A DNA stretch of 34,126 nucleotides, taken from positions 38,526,617 to 38,560,742 of the forward strand of contig NC_068994.1 of assembly GCF_001194135.2 (NCBI RefSeq), written 5' to 3'. Source of the stretch: Octopus bimaculoides (taxonomy: Eukaryota). Of this stretch, positions 189-34,126 are shown piece by piece. Numbering within the stretch: the first letter of the stretch is position 1; each line of letters starts with the position of its first letter. Below the pieces are notes generated by a model. The model saw only the letters and a list, made by a program, of their open reading frames with translations, did not search any database and was not told the DNA's origin. The translations under genes and the position numbers were made by a program.

Positions 189-2204
189 CTGTTGATGTGG
201 CCTTAAAACTGGATCATGCCATCTATCATATGATGTAGTTCTGTAGTGAATATCTTCTCTGTCTATGATTGGTTGTTGGGATTTCTTCAGATTTCTCTCC
301 ATTGTGTACTGAACTCCAGGAGGAACACAAGTAGGATCAAATATATATTTTGATTGNNNNNNNNNNNNNNNNNNNNNNNNNNNNNNNNNNNNNNNNNNNN
401 NNNNNNNNNNNNNNNNNNNNNNNNNNNNNNNNNNNNNNNNNNNNNNNNNNNNNNNNNNNNNNNNNNNNNNNNNNNNNNNNNNNNNNNNNNNNNNNNNNNN
501 NNNNNNNNNNNNNNNNNNNNNNNNNNNNNNNNNNNNNNNNNNNNNNNNNNNNNNNNNNNNNNNNNNNNNNNNNNNNNNNNNNNNNNNNNNNNNNNNNNNN
601 NNNNNNNNNNNNNNNNNNNNNNNNNNNNNNNNNNNNNNNNNNNNNNNNNNNNNNNNNNNNNNNNNNNNNNNNNNNNNNNNNNNNNNNNNNNNNNNNNNNN
701 NNNNNNNNNNNNNNNNNNNNNNNNNNNNNNNNNNNNNNNNNNNNNNNNNNNNNNNNNNNNNNNNNNNNNNNNNNNNNNNNNNNNNNNNNNNNNNNNNNNN
801 NNNNNNNNNNNNNNNNNNNNNNNNNNNNNNNNNNNNNNNNNNNNNNNNNNNNNNNNNNNNNNNNNNNNNNNNNNNNNNNNNNNNNNNNNNNNNNNNNNNN
901 NNNNNNNNNNNNNNNNNNNNNNNNNNNNNNNNNNNNNNNNNNNNNNNNNNNNNNNNNNNNNNNNNNNNNNNNNNNNNNNNNNNNNNNNNNNNNNNNNNNN
1001 NNNNNNNNNNNNNNNNNNNNNNNNNNNNNNNNNNNNNNNNNNNNNNNNNNNNNNNNNNNNNNNNNNNNNNNNNNNNNNNNNNNNNNNNNNNNNNNNNNNN
1101 NNNNNNNNNNNNNNNNNNNNNNNNNNNNNNNNNNNNNNNNNNNNNNNNNNNNNNNNNNNNNNNNNNNNNNNNNNNNNNNNNNNNGATATCTGAAATGGTA
1201 GAATATCTTTTCCAATAGTCAACAAAGAATAGGTTAATTGTCCTCCATCTCCAATATCTGGGTCTGTAGCATTGACTTGTCCAACAGGGAAGTCTTTGTG
1301 TTCATTTTCATAGGTGAGAAACTTAAATATGTCCTGACTAAACTGAGGTTGTATGTCATTTATGTCAGTAACCAACATTGAAAACTGTTTCTGTACTTTC
1401 AATGGAGGTAAACCATTATCTTGACATTTAATGGTGAAATTAAATCTCTTCTCACTCTCTCTGTCTATTTCACTCTTGACAATAACTTTGTATTTCTTTT
1501 CAGAAATTGAGATTAGCTGAAGGTATCTATTTTGTAAATGACATTTCACTTGTCCATTTACTCCACTGTCATTGTCAATAACTTTGACATACGCAACAAA
1601 GCTGTGAATTTTAGTTGCTTCTGAGATGACAGCTGTGTTTCCAGTTGAATCTAAGACAAACTTGAAGTCAATATTTGGTGGATTGTTTAAGTAACTGATT
1701 CCATTTATTAGAACAGTGACAGTTGAGGACATAGGTGGCTTACCATTATCTGTGGCTTTTACAAATATTTTATAGGATTTTCCAAACTGAAATTCTGTTG
1801 TTAGAAATAGTTCTCCAGTTTGCCTATTCAGTTGAAAGCATTCTTTTATTTTACTTGGTGTCTTAGTACTTAAGCTATAGGAAATTCTTCCATTTTCTCT
1901 TTCATCCAAGTCTGTAGCAGACAGTCTTAAAATAGGTTTGTTTATCTGGTGTGTGTCATTTGCAGTGACATTGTAAATATGGTGAGAGAACACGGGGGAG
2001 TTATCATTTTCATCTTGCACTGATATTTCTAAATTTAGTACACCTTTCTTTGTTGGAGTACCCCCATCTATGGCAATTAACTGAATGTTGTAAATGTTTT
2101 GTGTTTCACGGTCCAAGTTACCATCTATAAGCAGTTGTAACAAATCACTTCCATCCAATTTCTTAGATACAAACAATTGGAATGGAACATCTTCATCCTC
2201 TTTG
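189..2204 (-). CDS. Protocadherin A, large coding exon 1 (partial: end of EC2, EC3, EC4, start of EC5, then proximal cytoplasmic segment); 5' part in gap 2205-3071, middle in gap 357-1184, exons 2-3 beyond the window edge
   Basis: Cadherin motifs LDRE, AIDGG, DENDNSPVF, ATDLDE, DINDIQPQF, ATDPD. Bases 356-189 translate as QSKYIFDPTCVPPGVQYTMERNLKKSQQPIIDREDIHYRTTSYDRWHDPVLRPHQQ (homologous to B and C) and end at a phase-0 donor CAG|GTAAGT (GT at 188-187). The NQNIYL... tail in the ORF track is a wrong-frame reading across the gap. Confidence 0.93.
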
Positions 2205-3071
2205 NNNNNNNNNNNNNNNNNNNNNNNNNNNNNNNNNNNNNNNNNNNNNNNNNNNNNNNNNNNNNNNNNNNNNNNNNNNNNNNNNNNNNNNNNNNNNNNN
2301 NNNNNNNNNNNNNNNNNNNNNNNNNNNNNNNNNNNNNNNNNNNNNNNNNNNNNNNNNNNNNNNNNNNNNNNNNNNNNNNNNNNNNNNNNNNNNNNNNNNN
2401 NNNNNNNNNNNNNNNNNNNNNNNNNNNNNNNNNNNNNNNNNNNNNNNNNNNNNNNNNNNNNNNNNNNNNNNNNNNNNNNNNNNNNNNNNNNNNNNNNNNN
2501 NNNNNNNNNNNNNNNNNNNNNNNNNNNNNNNNNNNNNNNNNNNNNNNNNNNNNNNNNNNNNNNNNNNNNNNNNNNNNNNNNNNNNNNNNNNNNNNNNNNN
2601 NNNNNNNNNNNNNNNNNNNNNNNNNNNNNNNNNNNNNNNNNNNNNNNNNNNNNNNNNNNNNNNNNNNNNNNNNNNNNNNNNNNNNNNNNNNNNNNNNNNN
2701 NNNNNNNNNNNNNNNNNNNNNNNNNNNNNNNNNNNNNNNNNNNNNNNNNNNNNNNNNNNNNNNNNNNNNNNNNNNNNNNNNNNNNNNNNNNNNNNNNNNN
2801 NNNNNNNNNNNNNNNNNNNNNNNNNNNNNNNNNNNNNNNNNNNNNNNNNNNNNNNNNNNNNNNNNNNNNNNNNNNNNNNNNNNNNNNNNNNNNNNNNNNN
2901 NNNNNNNNNNNNNNNNNNNNNNNNNNNNNNNNNNNNNNNNNNNNNNNNNNNNNNNNNNNNNNNNNNNNNNNNNNNNNNNNNNNNNNNNNNNNNNNNNNNN
3001 NNNNNNNNNNNNNNNNNNNNNNNNNNNNNNNNNNNNNNNNNNNNNNNNNNNNNNNNNNNNNNNNNNNNNNN

Positions 3072-3934
3072 CCAATCTAAAAGAGACATTAAGAGTTGCA
3101 ACTAATTGATGTGTAACACCAGACAAGCAGACCAAATGAAAGGCAATCAAACTAAGAACTTCATATTCTTTTAAAAATATTCCATGCCAGCATGGAAAAA
3201 TAGACGTTCAATGCTGAAGATGATTTATTGAATACCATAAGATGCAGTATTTCTAATCTGAAGCGTGTGATTTGATAGATACTTGGTTGCTATTTCTAGC
3301 AAGTCCAAGAATTCATTAAGAGTATTAATTTATTTAGAGTAACCTCCCTTACTTTCAAAACTACTTCATGATCCAATTTCTCAGATATTGAATCTAACAA
3401 TCTTGGGAAAACAAGATACTCAAATATTTTACAATATAAAGTAAAAACTTGATAAACTNNNNNNNNNNGAACAAGAGGTATTTCATCACCGTTGCCCTCT
3501 TGTTAACAGCTTTATCAAGTTACTTATACAGACTTACATTTTCTACACATACTTGGTAGCTCAATTAAATAAATTATTGAAACATTACCAATCTAAAAGA
3601 GACATTAAGAGTTGCAACTAATTGATGTGTAACACCAGACAAGCAGACCAAATGAAAGGCAATCAAACTAAGAACTTCATATTCTTTTAAAAATATTCCA
3701 TGCCAGCATGGAAAAATAGNNNNNNNNNNNNNNNNNNNNNNNNNNNNNNNNNNNNNNNNNNNNNNNNNNNNNNNNNNNNNNNNNNNNNNCATTAAGAGTA
3801 TTAATTTATTTAGAGTAACCTCCCTTACTTTCAAAACTACTTCATGATCCAATTTCTCAGATATTGAATCTAACAATCTTGGGAAAACAAGATACTCAAA
3901 TATTTTACAATATAAAGTAAAAACTTGATAAACT
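3072..3934. repeat. Identical direct duplication (3072-3458 and 3588-3934) bounded by N gaps; probable assembly artefact
   Basis: 3072-3202 equals 3588-3719 and 3315-3458 equals 3790-3934; gaps at 3459-3468 and 3720-3789. Confidence 0.85.
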
Positions 3935-4294
3935 ACTCAATTAACATTAACTAAAACAATTATCATCAGTACATCCCGTCTGTTACATCCTGATCTATCA
4001 ACTAATCCTATACTAAATGATTAAATTGACAATATTGCAAAAAGAGAGAAAATATATATTTTTAAAGAATGTAATTATTAAAATAATACTAAATTCTGTT
4101 TATGAAACTTCCATCTCAAGTATTTATTGAAAATATATATAAAATGTATATAGAAAATGACATTGCTGTACAGGAAGTAATTAACTATCTGATTTTCCTA
4201 TGGGTGTAGTTTTAGCAAGATGGTAGTTAATGGGAAGTGAAATGATCAAACATCAACAAAAACAATTTATACATCAGAATAACTTTTAATAAAT

Positions 4295-4303
4295 ACTTAC
4301 CAA
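4295..4303 (-). promoter_or_regulatory. Predicted splice donor of a non-coding 5'-UTR exon of Pcdh A (TTG|GTAAGT)
   Basis: Strong donor consensus just downstream of the conserved upstream block; homologous site in B at 11361-11369; B and D coding exons are preceded by acceptors. Confidence 0.55.
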
Positions 4304-4435
4304 CAGTTGTCAGTCGTTTATGCAGTTGTTACTGTATTGTTTCAGTCTTCTGGTAACAAAGTTATAGTACTAGCAGAAGTTTTGAGTAGTTTGGTATGTA
4401 ACAGTGTTATGTAGTTCTATCAAGTTGGTTGTGTT

Positions 4436-4602
4436 GTATGTAATGTGTGTTGTAGCCAATGACAAGCTGTCTATTATTCCAGTGCAAGGAAACGGAAATA
4501 CAACCTCCAGTTCTTGCAGTAAATGATGGGCTGACTCACAAAATATTTCACTTAGACACACTCATATATAGATACATACATATACATGTGTGTGGTGAGA
4601 AG
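4436..4602 (-). promoter_or_regulatory. Conserved upstream element of Pcdh A (candidate promoter/TSS region)
   Basis: 166/167 identical to 11506-11672; contains CCAAT, an ETS-like ACGGAAAT and an AP-1 TGACTCA; lies upstream of the predicted 5'-UTR donor. Confidence 0.55.
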
Positions 4603-6654: not shown

Positions 6655-6920
6655 GTCCCAGCTACCCTGTCTAGAGTGAGCACCATGCACTGTGATAGCT
6701 TGGGATTCAAGGGTCCACAGCTATTTAATGCCTTGTCCAAACATCTCAGGGATCTTCATGGAGTAGAGTAGATGTTTTCCAGAAATAAATTGACCTCTTG
6801 TCCCAGATGAAACTTTATTATGGCAGGAAACTCAATCACTAAAAGCCTATCATGTAAGATAGGCCATTGAAAACATGATTTCAGCCTTAACACAGAATCG
6901 TATAAATAAATAAATAAAGT
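6655..6920 (+). mobile_element. Degenerate 3' end of a CR1/L2-like LINE in Pcdh B intron 2
   Basis: Translates as ...DSLGFKGPQLFNALSKHLRDLHGV*, then in a shifted frame VDVF...VPDE, resembling CR1-type ORF2 C-termini; (TAAA)n tail at about 6902-6917. Confidence 0.55.
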
Positions 6921-7224
6921 CCCGTTCAGATATGTACAAGCTATACAAAGACAAAATTTGCTTTCACTTTTATGGTAAAGGCTCTAGCATGGCTGTGTTA
7001 TGAAGAATTTCACTTCTCAACCACATGATTATAGGTTTAGTTCTCTACTGCTGTCTCAGACAAGTCAAATTCTTTTGAACGATAGTACAAACAGAAAAAT
7101 GGGAGGCATACAGTCAATTTTCTGATAGTATTTATCATTCAAAAGTAATAATTGTGTGCTTGTCTCCTGCTATTGATAGTTGTCAGCGAGCATTGGCATC
7201 ACACATGCTGTAGCATTCATTTCT

Positions 7225-7939: not shown

Positions 7940-10165
7940 CTGTTGATGTAGTTCAGTGAAAGCTGGGTTACCCCATCTATCATATGATATAGTTCTGCAG
8001 TGAATATCATCTCTGTCTACCATTGGTTGATGAGATTTCTCCACATTTCTCTCCATTGTGTACTGAACTTCAGGAGGAACACAAGTAGGATCAAATATAT
8101 ATTTTGATTGGATGTTTAANNNNNNNNNNNNNNNNNNNNNNNNNNNNNNNNNNNNNNNNNNNNNNNNNNNNNNNNNNNNNNNNNNNNNNNNNNNNNNNNN
8201 NNNNNNNNNNNNNNNNNNNNNNNNNNNNNNNNNNNNNNNNNNNNNNNNNNNNNNNNNNNNNNNNNNNNNNNNNNNNNNNNNNNNNNNNNNNNNNNNNNNN
8301 NNNNTGATGGTTCATTTGAAATAAGTGTTTCTCATTACCTCTGAGTATTTCATATGTGAGGAAGGCATTGTGTTGACTGTCTCTGTCAGAGGCCCTAACA
8401 ATTGTGATATCATGGTCAGAGTGGGGATGGTAGTGGACATTAAGACTGAAAGGGTCAACATTAGGGAAACTGAAATAGGGAGCATTATCATTTAAATCCA
8501 TAACCTCAACAACAACATTTGCTGTGTTCTCCAGTGATGGTGTTCCTTTATCTTTTACTAAAACCTTAAACTCATACATGTTCTTTTCTTCTCTGTCTAG
8601 TGACTCAGTTGTGGAAATAAATCCCACATCAGATATCTGAAATGGTAGAATATCTTTATCATTAGTCAACAAAGAATAGATTAATTGTCCTCCATCTCCA
8701 ATATCTGGGTCTGTAGCATTGACATATCCCACAGGGAAGTCTTTGTGTTCATTTTCATAGGTGAGAAACTTAAATATGTCCTGACTAAACTGAGGTTGTA
8801 TGTCATTTATGTCAGTAACCAGTATAGAAAACTGTTTCTCTACTGTCAATGGGGGTAAACCATTATCTTGACATTTAATGGTGAAATTAAAGCTCTTCTC
8901 ACTCTCTCTATCTATTTCACTCTTGACAATAACTTTGTATTTTTTTTCAGACATTGAGATAAGCTGCAGGTACTTATTTTGTAAATGACACTTCACTTGT
9001 CCATTTACTCCACTGTCATTGTCAGTTACTTTGACATACGCGACAAAGCTCTGAATATGAGTTGCTTCTGAGATGACAGCTGTTTTCCCAGTTGACTTAA
9101 TGACAAATCTGAAGTCAATATTTGGTGGATTGTTAAGATGAGTGATTCCATTTATAAGAACAGTGACAGTTGAGGACATAGGTGGTTTACCATTATCTGT
9201 GGCTTTAACAAACACTTTATAGAATCTTCCAAACTGAAATTCTGTTGTTACAAATAGTTCTCCAGTTACTTTATTCAACCGAAAGCATTCTTTTATCTTA
9301 TTAGGTGTTTTAGTACTAAAAGAATAAGAAATTCTTTGATTCTCTCCTACATCTGAATCTGTTGCAGACAGTCTTAGAACAGGTATGTTTATCTGGTGTG
9401 TATCATTGATAGTGATGTTATAGATATTCTGTGAAAACAGTGGAGAGTTATCATTTTCATCTTGCACCAATATTTCTATATATTTTGTACACCTTCTTTT
9501 TGTGGTGATCCTCCATCTCTTGCAATCAACTGTATATTATAAATGTCTTTTTTCTCACGATCTAATGTACCTTTTAAAATTAGTTGTAATAAATCATTCC
9601 CATCAGAATTATTAGATATAAACAATCGAAATGGGATATCTTCACTATCATAGAGTCGATAAATCAGTTTAGAATTTTGAATACTAACGTCATTATCAAT
9701 GGCATTTGGAATAATCCTTTTTGAACCTAATAGACTTTCCTGTAACTCTATTTGAAATACCTTGTCTGGAAACATAGGATAATTATCATTGATATCGTCT
9801 ATTATAATTTTGACTTCTAATATCTTGATAACAGAATGGCCATGTTGAACTGCTACTTCTAAAATCCTGAAACATTCCACATTATATTGGCACAGAGTTT
9901 CTGCATCCAATATGGTAGCTGTATACAAGTGTCCTCCAGGTGTAACATTAAATAACTGAACAGTTCCATCAGTACTATCCTGGATTACATTAAATATTAG
10001 TCTGCTGCTATCATCCTGAGATGGTACAGTATTCAGCAGTAGTGTATCAGTGGCAATATCTCCAATATAGCTGTGTCTATCATTGTTCTCTTTCACATGG
10101 TAGATATGATCTACACACCAGCAACTTCCAGAAAGAAACAACACCAACAATACAACTGGACACAT
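7940..10165 (-). pseudogene. Protocadherin B large coding exon 1 (signal peptide, EC1-EC6, TM in gap 8120-8304, proximal tail) with a +2 frameshift at about 9480; pseudogene, null allele or consensus error
   Basis: ORFs 10165-9476 and 9470-8305 are consecutive parts of one protocadherin; against A (GTA CTA AAT TTA GAA ATA TCA GTG) B reads GTA CAA AAT AT ATA GAA ATA TTG GTG. Acceptor TATTTCAG at 10174-10173 precedes the ATG; phase-0 donor CAG|GTAAGA at 7939. Confidence 0.85.
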
Positions 10166-10338
10166 TTTCTATCTGAAATAGAGTTATATATCAATATTCA
10201 TAATTCAAGATTTAATAAATGCAGAGAAAATATGACTGAAAATTTTGCTACATACGTAGATATTTATGAAATCTGAAATCTGTACATATCAGTGTTGTCT
10301 TTAATATGTTTGATGTAAGTGAATTATATTTAGCTGTA

Positions 10339-10475
10339 GTGGAGGCGCAATGACTCAGTGGTTAGGGCAGTGGACTCGCGGTCATAGGATCGCGGTTTCG
10401 TTTCCCAGACTGGACGTTGTGAGTGTTTATTGAGTGAAAACACCTAAAGCTCCATGAGGCTCCGGCATGGGATGG
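10339..10475 (+). mobile_element. tRNA-derived SINE head in the 5'-UTR intron of Pcdh B
   Basis: Pol III A-box-like TGACTCAGTGG (10351-10361) and B-box-like GGTTTCGTTTCCC (about 10394-10406); GC/CpG-rich island in AT-rich DNA; does not close as a full tRNA. Confidence 0.75.
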
Positions 10476-11360
10476 TGAATTTCAGGGAGCATGGAGGATT
10501 TCCACCTCCCAGGATGCCAATTATTTCATTTTCTCTATCTCTTACACAATTACTGCCATTTTCAAATAGAGAAATATCACTGCTAGGCATCGACTGGTGA
10601 CAAAATCTCATGTTTAAAACAACAATTTCATATATACCAGCCCTTGTATCAACTCCCCAATATTACATATTAAAACTTCTCCCTGATATTACATTTCTAA
10701 ACATGCAGAGATATTAAGAGTTTCTATATTGATGTGTAACACTAGACCAGCTCTGACCAAATAGAAGTATTTTGAAAGGCATGCTGTATTTCTTAACTGA
10801 AGGGTGTGAGTTGTGGGATATTTGGCTGCTATTTCTAGCAAGTCCAACAACTGCGTAGAATTTCCTTCGACGAATCTTTGGGAGTAATCTCCCTTTCTTT
10901 CAAAACTACATCATTATTCAATTTCTTAAATGTAGAATCTAAACTATCAGATGAAAACAGAATACTCCTTATTTTGCAATATAAAATAAAAACTTCATAA
11001 ACCCTTACACTAATATAAAATAATATTGGTATTGTCAGTATATATTTATCAACAGTAACTGATATTATGGCTATAGATGACTAGACTGAGAATTTTGTAA
11101 AAAGAGAGAAAACAATATATTTTTAAAGAATGTAAATGTTAAAATAATGTTGAATTGTATTTGTATTTTGCTGATAATTCTGCCTTAAGTATTTGTTGAA
11201 AATATTTTATCAATAATTAACTAAAGGTTTTTAAAAAATAACATTGTTGTACAGGAAGTAATTATGTTTCATATTGGTGTAGTATTAAGATGGTGAGGGA
11301 GAGAGAAATGAACAAATGTCTAAAGAATCAAATTATACATCAAAATAACTTTGAATGAAT

Positions 11361-11369
11361 ACTTGCCAA
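11361..11369 (-). promoter_or_regulatory. Predicted GC-type splice donor (TTG|GCAAGT) of the Pcdh B 5'-UTR exon
   Basis: Homologous position to the GTAAGT donor of A at 4300; matching acceptor at 10174-10173. Confidence 0.45.
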
Positions 11370-11505
11370 CAGTTGTTTATATTGTTTATATTGTTGTAAA
11401 TGTACTGTTTTAGCGTTCTGATAACATAAAGTTGTAATAGAAGCAGCAGTTCTGAGTAATTTGTTATGTGATGGTGTTATGTAGTTCTGTGAAGTTGGTT
11501 GTGTA

Positions 11506-11672
11506 GTATGTAATGTGTGTTGTAGCCAATGACAAGCTGTCTATTATTCCAATGCAAGGAAACGGAAATACAACCTCCAGTTCTTGCAGTAAATGATGGG
11601 CTGACTCACAAAATATTTCACTTAGACACACTCATATATAGATACATACATATACATGTGTGTGGTGAGAAG
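11506..11672 (-). promoter_or_regulatory. Conserved upstream element of Pcdh B (candidate promoter/TSS region)
   Basis: 166/167 identical to 4436-4602 (single difference 4482 G / 11552 A); about 1.3-1.5 kb upstream of the ATG. Confidence 0.55.
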
Positions 11673-14865: not shown

Positions 14866-15614
14866 CTGCTGGCATATTCTTAATGTTGGGTTATTCCATT
14901 TATCACCTGAAATGGTTCTGCAGTGAATATCTTCTCTGTCTACCATTGGTTGATGAGAATTCTTTACATTTCTCTCTCTTGTGTAATGAACACCAGAAGA
15001 AACGCAAATAGAATCGAACATATATTTTGATTGTATGTTTAATGTTGGTGTAACCTTGTAGTAAATATCAACACTACTATCATAGTTGCTATCTGTCTGC
15101 TTCAGTCTATGAACTATACAGATTGATATAGAGATCTCTATAACAACTGATACTATCACAGCTGCTATAACAATAACAATCATCACATTCAATTGGAGAC
15201 CATTACTTGATTCTGTTGTTGTCTTTGAAGGGGTCTTAAATATCTTTGATGTGTTGTTACTAACTGTTAGAGTCAAAGACAATGTTGTTGTTGATGAGAG
15301 AACTGGATTCCCACTGTCTTTCACACCTAATTCCAGTTCATAGAATCCAGCATCATTTTGGTAAAGTGAGCGAGAGAAAGATAAGACACCAGAGTGATGG
15401 TTCATTTGAAATAAGTGTTTCTCATTACCTCTGAGTATTTCATATGTGAGGAAGGCATTGTGTTGACTGTCTCTGTCAGAGGCCCTAACAACTGTGATAT
15501 CATGGTCAGAGTTGGGATGGTAGTGGACATTAAGACTGAAAGGGTTGACATTAGGGAAACTGAAATAGGGAGCATTATCATTTAAATCCATAACCTCAAC
15601 AACAACATTTGCTG
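14866..15614 (-). pseudogene. 5'-truncated protocadherin C exon 1 (end of EC5, EC6, TM, proximal tail)
   Basis: Open frame ANVVVEVMDLNDNAPYF...EC6...VMIVIVIAAVIVSVVIEISISICIV...LRICQQ; phase-0 donor CAG|GTGAGA at 14865; identity to B stops abruptly at 15614 with no N gap and no upstream cadherin sequence. Confidence 0.85.
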
Positions 15615-16689
15615 AACATTAGTCCTGAATCAGCTATTAGTAGTTCACTGTGCAAAAGAATTCCAGCTGTAAGCATCTTATAGTTTACTCTTCTTTTATC
15701 TTTAGAAAGTTAAAATGGTGAGTATTCAGGTAGATTTGGCTGCTATGTTTAGCAGTTCAAGCTACTAACTAGAGACTTTGTTAGTATAAGTGACTGGTAC
15801 AAATCACTTCCTGTGAATCACTATCTGAAATGCAATTTTGATTTCTCTCAAAAATGTTTTTTCATTAAACGTGATGCTGATCTAAAACACCGAACCTTAA
15901 CTTTTCTTGTGATGGTTCATCCTTATAAAGTTAATAAAACATTGCTTTGGTTACCAAGAACTATTTATTCTGCATAAGAACAAATTCATACTACTCTTCT
16001 TCTGTCAACTTGTGTAAGACATATAAACTTGTCACATAATCCATGAATTATAAGATTTGTGTGGTGTTATTTGTGTTGTCATGTCTTTCATAACTTGTAC
16101 TGTATGGAGCTGCCTCTTCTCAAAGGAACACTTGGCCATTGGATTTTACACTTCATTTAAAGTCTCAAAATACAAGCAATACTACGAAGATACAATTAGA
16201 ATTATCTGCTGTAGCTGCTTAGCGAAAAACAGGTTAGCTGACACTAATATCAGTTGAATATTTACTAATGAATGATTTATACCTTGTATTTAACCCTGTA
16301 TACAATGCCCATGTGTAGCTTTAATGCATTCACATGTCTAAGTATTAATTTGTTGGTAGAGATATTACAAATATTCTAGTAGATTCTCTTTAGTAGAAGT
16401 ATTTTTCATGTTCAATAAGCACATTTCCTTCGTTCATTTATCCTGAAATCCATAGAATCTAAGGGAGGTAACTAATGATCAAACAATTCCTTTTGCTTCG
16501 TAAACAGTGCAACCCGTCTGAAACAAAATGAGTATTCTTTTCACAGATGGAAGGTGCAGTATCAAGGAAAATTGGCAGTTATTTCCTGACCACATAGAAT
16601 TAAAATGCTTTCACGCATATCATTTCAGTTTGGTCATTAGAACTGACGAGGGAGCAGATGTTCTATAACAACAACTACAATATTTTCAT

Positions 16690-21454: not shown

Positions 21455-21862
21455 GATCTTTTATCTTTTATCGTTTACTTGTTTCAGTCATTAGACTGTG
21501 GCCATGCTTGAATAAGTTTTCGTCAAATGAATTGACCCAGGTACTTATTTTTTGTTAAGCCTAGTACTTATTCTATCAGTCTCTTTTGTCAAACTGCTAA
21601 GTTACAGCAACATTAACACGCCAATAGCAGTTGTCAAGCAGTGGAGTGGGGACAAACACAGACACAAAAAACATACACATATATATATATATATATATGA
21701 TACGCTTCTTTCAGTTTCTATCTACTAAATTCACCCACAAGGCTTTGATCAGCCCAAGGCTATAGTAGAAGGCACTTGCTCAAGGTGCCATGAAGTGGGG
21801 CTGAACCAGGAACCATGTGATTGAGTAGCAAGCTTCTTACCACATAGCCATGCCTGTGCCTA
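21455..21862 (-). mobile_element. Near full-length tRNA-derived SINE with internal (TA)n/(CA)n
   Basis: Minus-strand head GGCATGGCTATGTGGTAAGAAGCTTGCT...GGTTCAGCCCCACT (A/B-box-like); body shared with 28220-28362, 29078-29370 and 33962-34126. Confidence 0.8.
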
Positions 21863-22594
21863 TGAAATAGCAAAAGGCACTTTTCTGTTTTCCCAAGAAT
21901 GTAATGATGTTGGTGCTGTAGGTGGTAGAGGTGGAAGGGACAAGAAGAAGCATGAGAAATAAATTCAGATGTATTGAGGTACAGGACAAAAGGAAAGATT
22001 TCCTCATTTTTATCTGACATATTGTGGGATTAAGAAATACTTTCACTTCTCCCCATAGAAAAAAAAAAAAAAGGAAATCATTAACATTTAGCTTTTTATG
22101 AATTAATGTACATATGATAGACAACAATAAACATTTATTATATGATTTCATGTAGTGATATATCAATAAAATTATGAGGACGGATGTTCTAAGACACTTG
22201 GTAAAATTTTGTTTTGGAATTCTATGAAGATTATTCTATTATACTATTATACTATAGTATAATAGTATACTATTATACTATAAAATTACATTCATAGCAT
22301 TCATGGACATAGTGATATGAGAAGAGGACCGTCTTTAAAATAAAGTGATATCATACAAAAGAACTCACCAAAATATTACTATATTTGTTGGCATAGAAGG
22401 AAGCCTTTGACTTTTTCCAACAATGTAGCCTCATGGTCGACTATATTTTACATGACGGGTCATGAAAATTTTCTGAGTCTACCATAAAAGTATTAAAAAA
22501 AAATACAAAAAGAAAACCTAAAAAAAACCCCGAAAAATTCACCAAAAAATGCTGTTTTGGTGTGTCTTAGATACCAACAAATACAATACTTTGA

Positions 22595-33961: not shown

Positions 33962-34126
33962 GCCCTTTGACCCCAGTACTTATTCTTTGTAAGCCTAGTA
34001 CTTATTCTATCAGTCTCTTTTGCCGAATCACTGAGTTATGGAGACGTAAACACACCAACATCGGTTGTTAAATGATGGTGGGAGGACAAACACAGACACA
34101 CAAATACATATATATACATATATACA
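33962..34126 (-). mobile_element. SINE body fragment running off the window edge
   Basis: GACCCCAGTACTTATT...AAGCCTAGTACTTATTCTATCAGTCTCTTTTG...GGACAAACACAGACAC shared with 21535-21670. Confidence 0.8.

What the first reader, a model, noticed from the sequence alone, without database searches (positions are those of the whole stretch)
4436..4602. Non-coding 167-bp block more conserved between paralogs than their coding sequence: candidate cluster promoter element
Seen: 4436-4602 and 11506-11672 differ at one base although flanking non-coding DNA is visibly much more diverged and EC2 is only about 75% identical; the right boundary is sharp (GAGAAG|GTACC vs GAGAAG|ATTTA). It lies just upstream of a predicted 5'-UTR exon and contains CCAAT, ACGGAAAT (ETS-like), TGACTCA (AP-1) and a minus-strand TCATTT initiator-like motif. 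Established: vertebrate clustered Pcdh promoters share a conserved sequence element bound by CTCF that underlies stochastic promoter choice; no counterpart is something I can recall for cephalopods. Inference: this could be the functional analogue, kept identical by selection or promoter conversion. No copy is visible upstream of truncated C or within the 2.2 kb upstream of D.
Basis: partly seen in the sequence, partly recalled or inferred. Interest (0 to 1): 0.72.

Follow-up and report, generated by a model that had tools for sequence, protein, structure and literature searches.

The report
Octopus protocadherin promoter with conversion patch
The near-identical 167-bp block is real: it is most likely the conserved promoter region in front of a non-coding first exon of one octopus protocadherin gene subfamily, made almost identical in two neighbouring gene copies by a recent gene-conversion event, and it shows no sign of being a cluster-wide CTCF-type switch like the one in vertebrates.

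Summary
Observation confirmed. 4436-4602 and 11506-11672 match at 166/167 positions, inside about 63-73% identical non-coding DNA. The longest perfect run is 120 bp; the maximum in 20,000 permutations was 43.

The genes lie on the minus strand. In gene sense the block sits at the 5' end of a ~330-bp element (4267-4593), the only intergenic DNA that aligns with O. sinensis. It recurs there upstream of two tandem paralogs. It ends at a conserved GT donor (last exon base 4301 / 11367), and an acceptor lies 7 nt before gene B's ATG. So it looks like a proximal promoter plus non-coding exon 1.

Two layers explain the identity:
- Core 4436-4539 is 93-94% identical across species and paralog lineages, so it is constrained. 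It holds TGAGTCA, tandem GGAA and an inverted CCAAT.
- Distal 63 bp (4540-4602) is low-complexity, 56% identical to O. sinensis, yet 100% identical between A and B. Gene B is frameshifted and its exon 1 is decaying. Recent A/B gene conversion fits this best.

The CSE/CTCF analogy is not supported. The element is absent near 11 other Pcdh exons in 287 kb, gene D orthologs carry a different element, and no CTCF-consensus match falls in the block. No transcript data or independent assembly were available.

The parts
4436..4602 (-). The reported block, copy A (upstream of Pcdh gene A). It consists of the promoter core plus the distal low-complexity segment.
   Evidence: 166/167 identical to 11506-11672; alignment.
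11506..11672 (-). The reported block, copy B. It lies 1341-1507 bp upstream of gene B's ATG at 10165.
4436..4539 (-). Deeply conserved promoter core, copy A (copy B = 11506-11609). In gene sense it reads TGTGAGTCAGCCCATCATT ... GTATTTCCGTTTCCTTGCA ... AGACAGCTTGTCATTGGCTACAACACACATTACATAC.
   Evidence: 98/104 identical to both O. sinensis copies; 97 of 104 columns invariant across the four copies. The AP-1-like, tandem-GGAA and CCAAT combination is found only at the four element copies, 4 observed vs 0.015 expected.
4540..4602 (-). Distal 63-bp low-complexity (CA/TA/TG-rich) segment, copy A (copy B = 11610-11672). It is unconstrained across lineages but identical between A and B. This is the part that needs gene conversion to explain it.
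   Evidence: A-B 63/63. A or B vs O. sinensis 56-57%. Os1-Os2 96.9% plus a 2-bp indel. P(63/63 at the background identity of 0.63) is about 2e-13.
4301..4435 (-). Putative non-coding exon 1, copy A (TSS not mapped). It ends at the donor CTGTTG|GTAAGT, with GT at 4300-4299.
   Evidence: Over 4304-4435, A vs O. sinensis is 87-89% but A vs B only 78.8%. Donor position. Cross-species similarity stops about 35 bp past the donor.
11367..11505 (-). Putative non-coding exon 1, copy B. It ends at a GC donor (CTGTTG|GCAAGT) and carries an excess of B-private changes.
   Evidence: Donor. About 20 B-derived vs 8 A-derived differences, including two 2-bp insertions.
10173..11366 (-). Inferred intron 1 of gene B (1194 nt). 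Acceptor ctctatttcag|atagaaaATG. It contains a SINE-like insert at about 10337-10477.
   Evidence: The SINE-like piece has a 93% copy in O. sinensis L004.
7940..10172 (-). Large coding exon of Pcdh gene B (ATG 10165). It has a private 2-bp insertion at 9485-9486 leading to a stop at 9476-9478, and an N gap at 8120-8304.
   Evidence: Pfam Cadherin and Cadherin_2 domains. Frameshift relative to five other copies. Exon end CAACAG|GTAAGA.
291..356 (-). Second A/B-private near-identity tract (coding, TM region), paired with B 8045-8110. It is cut off by N gaps.
   Evidence: 65/66 identical between A and B, while gene C and all three O. sinensis copies differ at about a dozen sites.

Best explanation
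The block is where two things overlap.

(1) It is the 5' part of a ~330-bp conserved element that serves one subfamily of tandem octopus protocadherin genes (A, B, C-like). The element is a proximal promoter followed by a non-coding first exon. The promoter carries a palindromic TGAGTCA (bZIP/AP-1-type), a tandem GGAA (ETS- or IRF-type) and an inverted CCAAT box (NF-Y-type). The first exon is spliced, across a 1.2-2.9 kb intron, to an acceptor 7-19 nt before the start codon of the large cadherin exon. Purifying selection on transcription-factor sites keeps the 104-bp core about 94% identical, even between paralog lineages in different species.

(2) A recent non-allelic gene conversion between neighbours A and B lies on top of that. 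It spans at least 120 bp and most likely about 170-180 bp, with a sharp 5' end at 4602/4603. It erased all divergence, including in 63 bp of unconstrained microsatellite-like DNA. This is why the block is more alike than constraint alone would make it.

Shown: the identity pattern, the cross-species conservation, the splice-site architecture, the restriction to one subfamily, the frameshift in B. Inferred: promoter activity, TSS position, factor identities, and conversion rather than another homogenising process.
For: - Only exons and 4267-4593 align between the window and O. sinensis L001. The element recurs there at 6767-7092 and 15494-15817, upstream of two tandem paralogs.
- Identity by segment: core A/B vs Os 93-94% (coding 81-84%); distal 63 bp A-B 100% vs 56% to Os; exon part (4304-4435) A-B 78.8% while A-Os is 87-89%.
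- Conserved GT donor and AG acceptor in all copies.
- The same promoter/exon-1/intron layout occurs in gene D orthologs of O. sinensis and Argonauta, with a different sequence.
- Longest identical run 120 bp vs a permutation maximum of 43.
- Gene B carries a private frameshift, a GC donor and a roughly 2.5-fold excess of private exon-1 changes. Selection on B's own promoter is therefore an unlikely cause of the identity.
- A second A/B-private tract exists in coding DNA.
- O. sinensis tandem units, from an independent assembly, are a 73-99% identity mosaic. A 96-99% stretch runs over about 1.6 kb of otherwise unconserved intergenic DNA up to and through the element.
- Gene conversion has already been proposed for cephalopod Pcdh arrays (PMC9068888; PMC6339937).
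- No ncRNA signal.
Against: - No transcript, CAGE or chromatin data were reachable, so the TSS and promoter activity are inferred.
- A and B are sister copies, so conversion shows up only as a branch-length anomaly and not as a topology conflict.
- True orthologs of A and B in another species could not be retrieved. Lineage-specific constraint on the distal 63 bp is therefore not formally excluded.
- The window is a gap-rich draft with evident artefacts: two exactly duplicated segments (132 and 145 bp) beside gaps at 3072-3458 vs 3588-3934. No independent O. bimaculoides assembly or reads could be checked.
- B's 2-bp frameshift could itself be an assembly error.
Confidence: 0.6

Rival explanations
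1. Purifying selection alone. The whole 167 bp, including the distal 63 bp, is a functional element specific to the A/B lineage and has been held invariant since the A/B duplication, without any conversion.
For: The core is clearly constrained, at 93-94% across lineages. At that level of constraint, one difference or fewer in 104 bp is not very surprising. Other parts of these genes are also 97-100% conserved at the nucleotide level.
Against: - The distal 63 bp is microsatellite-like, 56% identical to O. sinensis, and already shows substitutions and a slippage indel between the young O. sinensis copies.
- A-B identity does not follow the constraint profile. It falls to 78.8% in the exon part, which is 87-89% conserved between A and O. 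sinensis.
- B looks like a decaying copy.
Confidence: 0.12
2. Assembly artefact. The two copies are less alike in the real genome, and a shared consensus was written into both during contig building or gap closure of a short-read draft.
For: The window has nine N gaps and two exactly duplicated segments beside gaps. Gene C is broken, and its 5' half sits on an unplaced contig. A 120-bp exact repeat is longer than a typical k-mer.
Against: - The block is not next to any gap.
- One paralog-specific difference (4482) is kept inside it.
- Both flanks are paralog-specific and continuous with the block.
- The core must be nearly identical anyway, given its cross-species conservation.
- The same kind of identity mosaic is seen in the independent O. 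sinensis assembly.
Confidence: 0.12
3. Functional counterpart of the vertebrate Pcdh CSE: a CTCF-bound element shared by cluster promoters that underlies stochastic promoter choice.
For: - The element is in promoter position in a tandem Pcdh array and is conserved.
- CTCF exists in cephalopods, and CTCF sites are reported as enriched at TAD borders in Euprymna (PMC10658181).
- A weak shared layout, ATTGGCTA followed by a CA-rich tract, is seen in both the A/B/C-type and the D-type elements.
Against: - The element is absent from 11 other Pcdh genes in 287 kb.
- D-type genes use a different element.
- No CTCF-consensus match falls in the block, and the window count equals chance.
- The ATTGGCTAC recurrence is at chance level. 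The layout test is post hoc, with only one independent and doubtful extra case.
- Cephalopod Pcdhs are complete genes without shared constant exons (PMC9068888), so the vertebrate promoter-choice logic is not required.
Confidence: 0.05
4. A dispersed repeat (TE or SINE fragment) or a small RNA gene that happens to lie in both units.
For: The distal end is low-complexity and matches microsatellite-like DNA at many places. Octopus genomes are repeat-rich, and real multi-copy repeats are present in the window.
Against: - The unique part of the block has no copy other than the four syntenic ones in 287 kb, whereas known repeats in the window hit many times.
- It sits at the same position in both units, with no insertion gap.
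- No Rfam or tRNA hit, and unremarkable folding z-scores of -1.6 to +0.7.
Confidence: 0.03

Closest known systems
Vertebrate clustered-protocadherin promoter CSE/SSE (CTCF-bound; PMC3333863)
   Same: Both are conserved non-coding sequence in promoter position in front of each gene of a tandem protocadherin array. Like the SSE, this element is specific to a gene or subfamily and conserved across species.
   Different: - The CSE is a ~22-bp motif shared by all 52 promoters. This element is about 100-330 bp and restricted to one subfamily.
- There is no CTCF-consensus match.
- The motifs here are AP-1-like, tandem GGAA and inverted CCAAT.
- The octopus element precedes a spliced non-coding exon.
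- Octopus Pcdhs are stand-alone genes with no shared constant exons.
Gene conversion and concerted evolution in tandem gene arrays, including Pcdh clusters (Noonan et al. 2004, as cited in PMC6339937; proposed for cephalopod Pcdhs in PMC9068888)
   Same: A short tract of near-identity between adjacent paralogs, with a sharp boundary, embedded in diverged DNA. Mosaic identity is seen along the tandem units in two species.
   Different: This tract covers a promoter and not coding sequence. From my own recollection, not checked here, the vertebrate Pcdh conversions were described mainly for coding regions. Conversion here is inferred from one pair of copies in one draft assembly.
Ordinary metazoan proximal promoters with NF-Y (CCAAT), AP-1 and ETS sites and a non-coding first exon
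   Same: Motif content, the spacing of the CCAAT box about 155 bp upstream of the exon-1 donor, a conserved GT donor, and an acceptor just before the ATG.
   Different: Factor binding, the TSS and activity are untested. No conserved TATA box was seen.

Membership tests
Vertebrate-type Pcdh CSE (cluster-wide CTCF promoter element) | Short core motif common to (nearly) all promoters of the cluster | tested here: not met
   The nhmmer profile and the three-motif scan find the element only at four A/B/C-subfamily sites in 287 kb that carry 11 other Pcdh big exons. D-type genes have a different conserved element.
Vertebrate-type Pcdh CSE (cluster-wide CTCF promoter element) | Contains or overlaps a CTCF binding site | tested here: not met
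   Consensus CCASYAGRKGGCRSY with up to 3 mismatches gives no match in 4436-4602. The window has 7 matches vs 6.95 expected. Actual CTCF binding cannot be tested here, and an octopus-specific CTCF motif was not available.
Vertebrate-type Pcdh CSE (cluster-wide CTCF promoter element) | Lies in the promoter just upstream of the TSS and is required for transcription | not testable with these tools
   The position is compatible, directly 5' of a putative exon 1. No TSS or reporter data were available.
Proximal promoter plus non-coding first exon | Conserved 5' splice donor at the 3' end, and a matching acceptor upstream of the start codon | tested here: met
   CTGTTG|GTAAGT in ObA, Os2-up and Os3-up (GCAAGT in ObB). 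Acceptors lie 7-19 nt before the ATG in ObB, Os1-3 and L003.
Proximal promoter plus non-coding first exon | Conserved across species while the surrounding intergenic and intronic DNA is not | tested here: met
   Only 4267-4593 and the exons align with O. sinensis. Core 93-94% vs flanks 36-51%.
Proximal promoter plus non-coding first exon | Transcript evidence: a TSS and an exon 1-exon 2 junction | not testable with these tools
   The window ORFs are not on record in any transcript-derived contig. No nucleotide search of octopus transcriptomes was available.
Non-allelic gene conversion tract | A run of identity between paralogs significantly longer than the background divergence allows, with discrete ends | tested here: met
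   120-bp perfect run (167 bp with one difference) vs a permutation maximum of 43. Sharp end at 4602/4603.
Non-allelic gene conversion tract | Identity extends over sites that are not under constraint (judged with an outgroup) | tested here: met
   Distal 63 bp: 100% between A and B vs 56% to O. sinensis, and variable between the O. sinensis copies.
Non-allelic gene conversion tract | Phylogenetic incongruence between the tract and its flanks | tested here: inconclusive
   A and B are sisters in the flanks too, so only branch lengths differ. In the adjacent exon part, A is closer to O. sinensis than to B. The orthologs of A and B needed for a topology test could not be fetched.
Non-allelic gene conversion tract | Both copies confirmed by independent reads or an independent assembly | not testable with these tools
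   Only the draft sequence itself was available. The independent O. sinensis assembly shows a similar mosaic, but that does not verify this locus.

The most novel reading that the evidence does not exclude
Octopod clustered protocadherin genes each carry a promoter with a shared minimal grammar: an inverted CCAAT box (ATTGGCTA) followed by a CA-rich initiator region and a non-coding exon 1. Within subfamilies, these promoters are actively homogenised by gene conversion so that neighbouring genes present equivalent promoters. That would be a convergent, CTCF-independent route to the interchangeable promoters that stochastic choice needs in vertebrates.
Probability: 0.08. Interest if true: 0.65.

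Novelty: new member of a known kind. Interest (0 to 1): 0.3.

Why it matters
None of the papers I could search describes a cis-regulatory element for cephalopod protocadherin genes, and one review calls their regulation "still-enigmatic" (PMC10658181). This locus gives a concrete, testable candidate:
- a ~100-bp core with three conserved motif clusters;
- a predicted exon 1-exon 2 junction for one Pcdh subfamily;
- a second, different element for the gene-D subfamily, conserved from Octopus to Argonauta.

It also gives a clean small example of conversion acting on a promoter in these arrays. In kind, though, this is what one expects of tandemly duplicated genes. It does not show vertebrate-like promoter-choice logic.

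Tried and rejected
- ncRNA reading: Rfam on the region (E up to 10) and on the whole window, ARAGORN, and RNA folding on both strands. Nothing found.
- Bacterial promoter/terminator scan: irrelevant to a eukaryote and uninformative.
- The 98.2% B/C tract at 8305-8524 vs 15395-15614: I first took it as independent evidence of conversion. Rejected, because the same segment is 97-100% identical to O. sinensis, so it is deep constraint.
- Exact-product look-ups for the window's D and B ORFs, hoping for transcript contigs or a second assembly: not on record. P0143 was also not on record.
- Third protein search, aimed at O. vulgaris or Argonauta members of the A/B/C subfamily: it returned only relatives at 59% identity or less over most of the query, so true orthologs of A and B were not obtained.
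- Cluster-wide motif idea:
  - ATTGGCTAC occurs once outside the family, where about one occurrence is expected by chance.
  - The ATTGGC-plus-CA-rich scan gives 7 of 9 hits upstream in gene sense, but only one independent, microsatellite-like new case.
  - The weak D-profile hits in L002 are CA microsatellites.
- Reading the element as a plus-strand exon: the GT after GAGAAG exists only in copy A.

Full report
**Setting.** The window is a gap-rich draft with nine N runs. It carries four protocadherin (Pcdh) genes, all on the minus strand, each with Cadherin and Cadherin_2 domains.
- Gene A: its ATG is lost in the gap 2205-3071.
- Gene B: ATG at 10165.
- Gene C: truncated at 15614.
- Gene D: intact 811-aa exon at 29432-31867.

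A and B are tandem units offset by 7070 bp. The closest named proteins are octopod; gene D is 93% identical to an O. vulgaris protocadherin. A transposon copy that is 96.6% identical to O. bimaculoides chromosome CM046614.1 points to O. bimaculoides as the source. That attribution is an inference.

4436-4602 and 11506-11672 differ only at 4482. The surrounding non-coding DNA is 73% identical by blastn, and 63% outside 4400-4602 in a global alignment. The longest perfect run is 120 bp. In 20,000 permutations of the mismatch positions the mean was 16.6 and the maximum 43. The right edge is sharp and the left edge decays gradually.

**What the element is.** I obtained 253 kb of related octopod DNA through protein look-ups:
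- O. sinensis L001, L002 and L004
- O. vulgaris L005
- O. bimaculoides L003, L006 and L007
- Argonauta hians L008

L001 holds three tandem paralogs of the A/B/C subfamily. Between the window and L001, only the exons and window 4267-4593 align. That stretch has two homologs at 81-87% identity (L001 6767-7092 and 15494-15817), each upstream of a paralog.

Read in gene sense, the four-way alignment shows, in order:
1. A low-complexity CA/TA stretch.
2. A highly conserved core containing TGTGAGTCAGCCCATCATT, GTATTTCCGTTTCCTTGCA and AGACAGCTTGTCATTGGCTAC.
3. About 135 nt more of conserved sequence.
4. The donor CTGTTG|GTAAGT, with the last exon base at 4301 in A and 11367 in B (B has GCAAGT), and at L001 7058 and 15783.

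Every copy has a polypyrimidine-AG acceptor 7-19 nt before the ATG. The architecture is therefore a promoter, a non-coding exon 1, an intron of 1.2-2.9 kb, and the large coding exon. Gene D orthologs in O. sinensis and Argonauta show the same architecture with a different conserved sequence (78.6% identical; donor TAT|GTAAGTCA). The layout is thus general, and the sequence is specific to each subfamily. No ncRNA signal was found.

**Why the two copies are nearly identical: two layers.**

| Segment (window coordinates) | A vs B | A or B vs O. sinensis |
|---|---|---|
| Core, 4436-4539 | 99% | 93-94% |
| Distal, 4540-4602 (63 bp) | 100% | 56-57% |
| Exon part, 4304-4435 | 78.8% | A 87-89%, B 82% |

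- The core is better conserved than the coding DNA (81-84%). Constraint alone could account for one difference in 104 bp.
- The distal segment is microsatellite-like. It already shows substitutions and a 2-bp slippage indel between the young O. sinensis copies. The chance of 63/63 matches at the background identity is about 2e-13.
- In the exon part, A is closer to O. sinensis than to B. A-B identity therefore does not follow the constraint profile.

Gene B also looks like a decaying copy:
- a private 2-bp insertion at 9485-9486 that gives a stop at 9476;
- a GC donor in place of GT;
- about 20 private changes in exon 1, against 8 in A.

Purifying selection on B's own promoter is thus an unlikely cause. 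A recent A/B conversion tract explains the pattern best. It is at least 120 bp long, is most simply read as 4436-4602, and may extend to about 4422.

Three further observations support conversion:
- A second A/B-private tract of 65/66 identity in coding DNA (A 291-356 vs B 8045-8110), cut off by gaps.
- A 73-99% identity mosaic between O. sinensis units in an independent assembly. It includes a 96-99% stretch of about 1.6 kb running through otherwise unconserved intergenic DNA into the element.
- Published proposals of gene conversion in cephalopod Pcdh arrays (PMC9068888; PMC6339937).

**Comparison with the vertebrate CSE.** The CSE is a ~22-bp motif common to all 52 cluster promoters and bound by CTCF (PMC3333863). 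Here:
- The profile and the AP-1 / tandem-GGAA / CCAAT combination occur only at the four subfamily sites in 287 kb that include 11 other Pcdh big exons.
- The CTCF consensus has no match in the block, and its count in the window is at chance level.
- One shared feature, ATTGGCTA followed by a CA-rich tract, appears in both the A/B/C-type and D-type elements. It is not statistically supported and I record it only as a lead.

**Caveats.**
- I had no transcript or chromatin data, no whole-genome nucleotide search of octopus assemblies, and no independent O. bimaculoides assembly or reads.
- The draft shows artefacts: two exactly duplicated segments beside gaps at 3072-3458 vs 3588-3934, and gene C broken, with its probable 5' half on the unplaced contig L003.
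- Collapse of the two copies in the assembly cannot be excluded. Against it: the block is not next to a gap, it keeps one copy-specific difference, and it is continuous with copy-specific flanks.

**Verdict.** The block most likely consists of a subfamily-specific proximal promoter, lying just upstream of a non-coding exon 1, plus 63 bp of unconstrained distal sequence, all homogenised between A and B by a recent conversion. The promoter reading and the promoter-conversion option are supported. The CSE/CTCF analogy is not. It is a new example of known kinds of feature and of modest interest. Its main value is as a concrete candidate regulatory element for cephalopod Pcdh genes.

Noticed in passing
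window 8305-8945 (gene B, minus strand); also A ~1185-1500, C 15043-15614, and L001 ~2538-3437: Part of the large coding exon is 91-100% identical at the nucleotide level across paralogs A/B/C and across species (B vs O. sinensis 97-100% over 8305-8584). The EC-domain part of the same exon is only 57-86% identical. This implies constraint at synonymous sites. RNA-editing structures are one possibility recalled from memory, not tested here.
   Followed up: partly
window 3072-3203 = 3588-3719 and 3314-3458 = 3790-3934: Two 100% identical duplications that flank N runs (3459-3468, 3720-3789). They are almost certainly gap-closure or scaffolding redundancy in gene A's intron 1 and not biology.
   Followed up: partly
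window 15614 (end of gene C homology); L003 (O. bimaculoides LGKD02088491.1, 1459 bp): The truncation of gene C looks like an assembly break. The unplaced contig L003 carries a 5' Pcdh exon half that is about 91% identical to the O. sinensis L001 genes, the same level as window gene C. It may be the missing half of C.
   Followed up: partly
window 9485-9486: A private 2-bp insertion in gene B, relative to A, L003 and three O. sinensis copies. It shifts the frame into a stop at 9476-9478. B is a probable pseudogene, or this is a sequence error. O. sinensis Os2 is also frameshifted, while Os1 and Os3 are intact (809 and 841 aa).
   Followed up: yes
window ~10337-10477 (intron 1 of gene B): A GC-rich, tRNA-like SINE-type insert, with a 93% copy in O. 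sinensis L004 25143-25283. ARAGORN and Rfam do not call it.
   Followed up: partly
window 25820-25897: Head-to-head interstitial telomere-type repeats: (TAACCC)x5 directly abutting (TAGGGT)x7, forming a perfect-type palindrome.
   Followed up: no
L002 8341-8679 and L008 4821-5269: Gene D orthologs in O. sinensis and Argonauta hians share their own conserved promoter/non-coding exon-1 element (78.6% identical; GCTATTGGCTA followed by a CA-rich tract; donor TAT|GTAAGTCA). No copy is in the window, so gene D's exon 1 must lie in the gap 32317-32712 or beyond 34126.
   Followed up: yes
window 21457-21863, 23459-23650, 32715-33065, 33967-34126; 33152-33481: Multi-copy dispersed repeats with many hits in all octopod loci, up to 96.6% identical in O. 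bimaculoides L006. There is also a 165-bp tandem duplication (2 copies, 87% identical) upstream of gene D.
   Followed up: no
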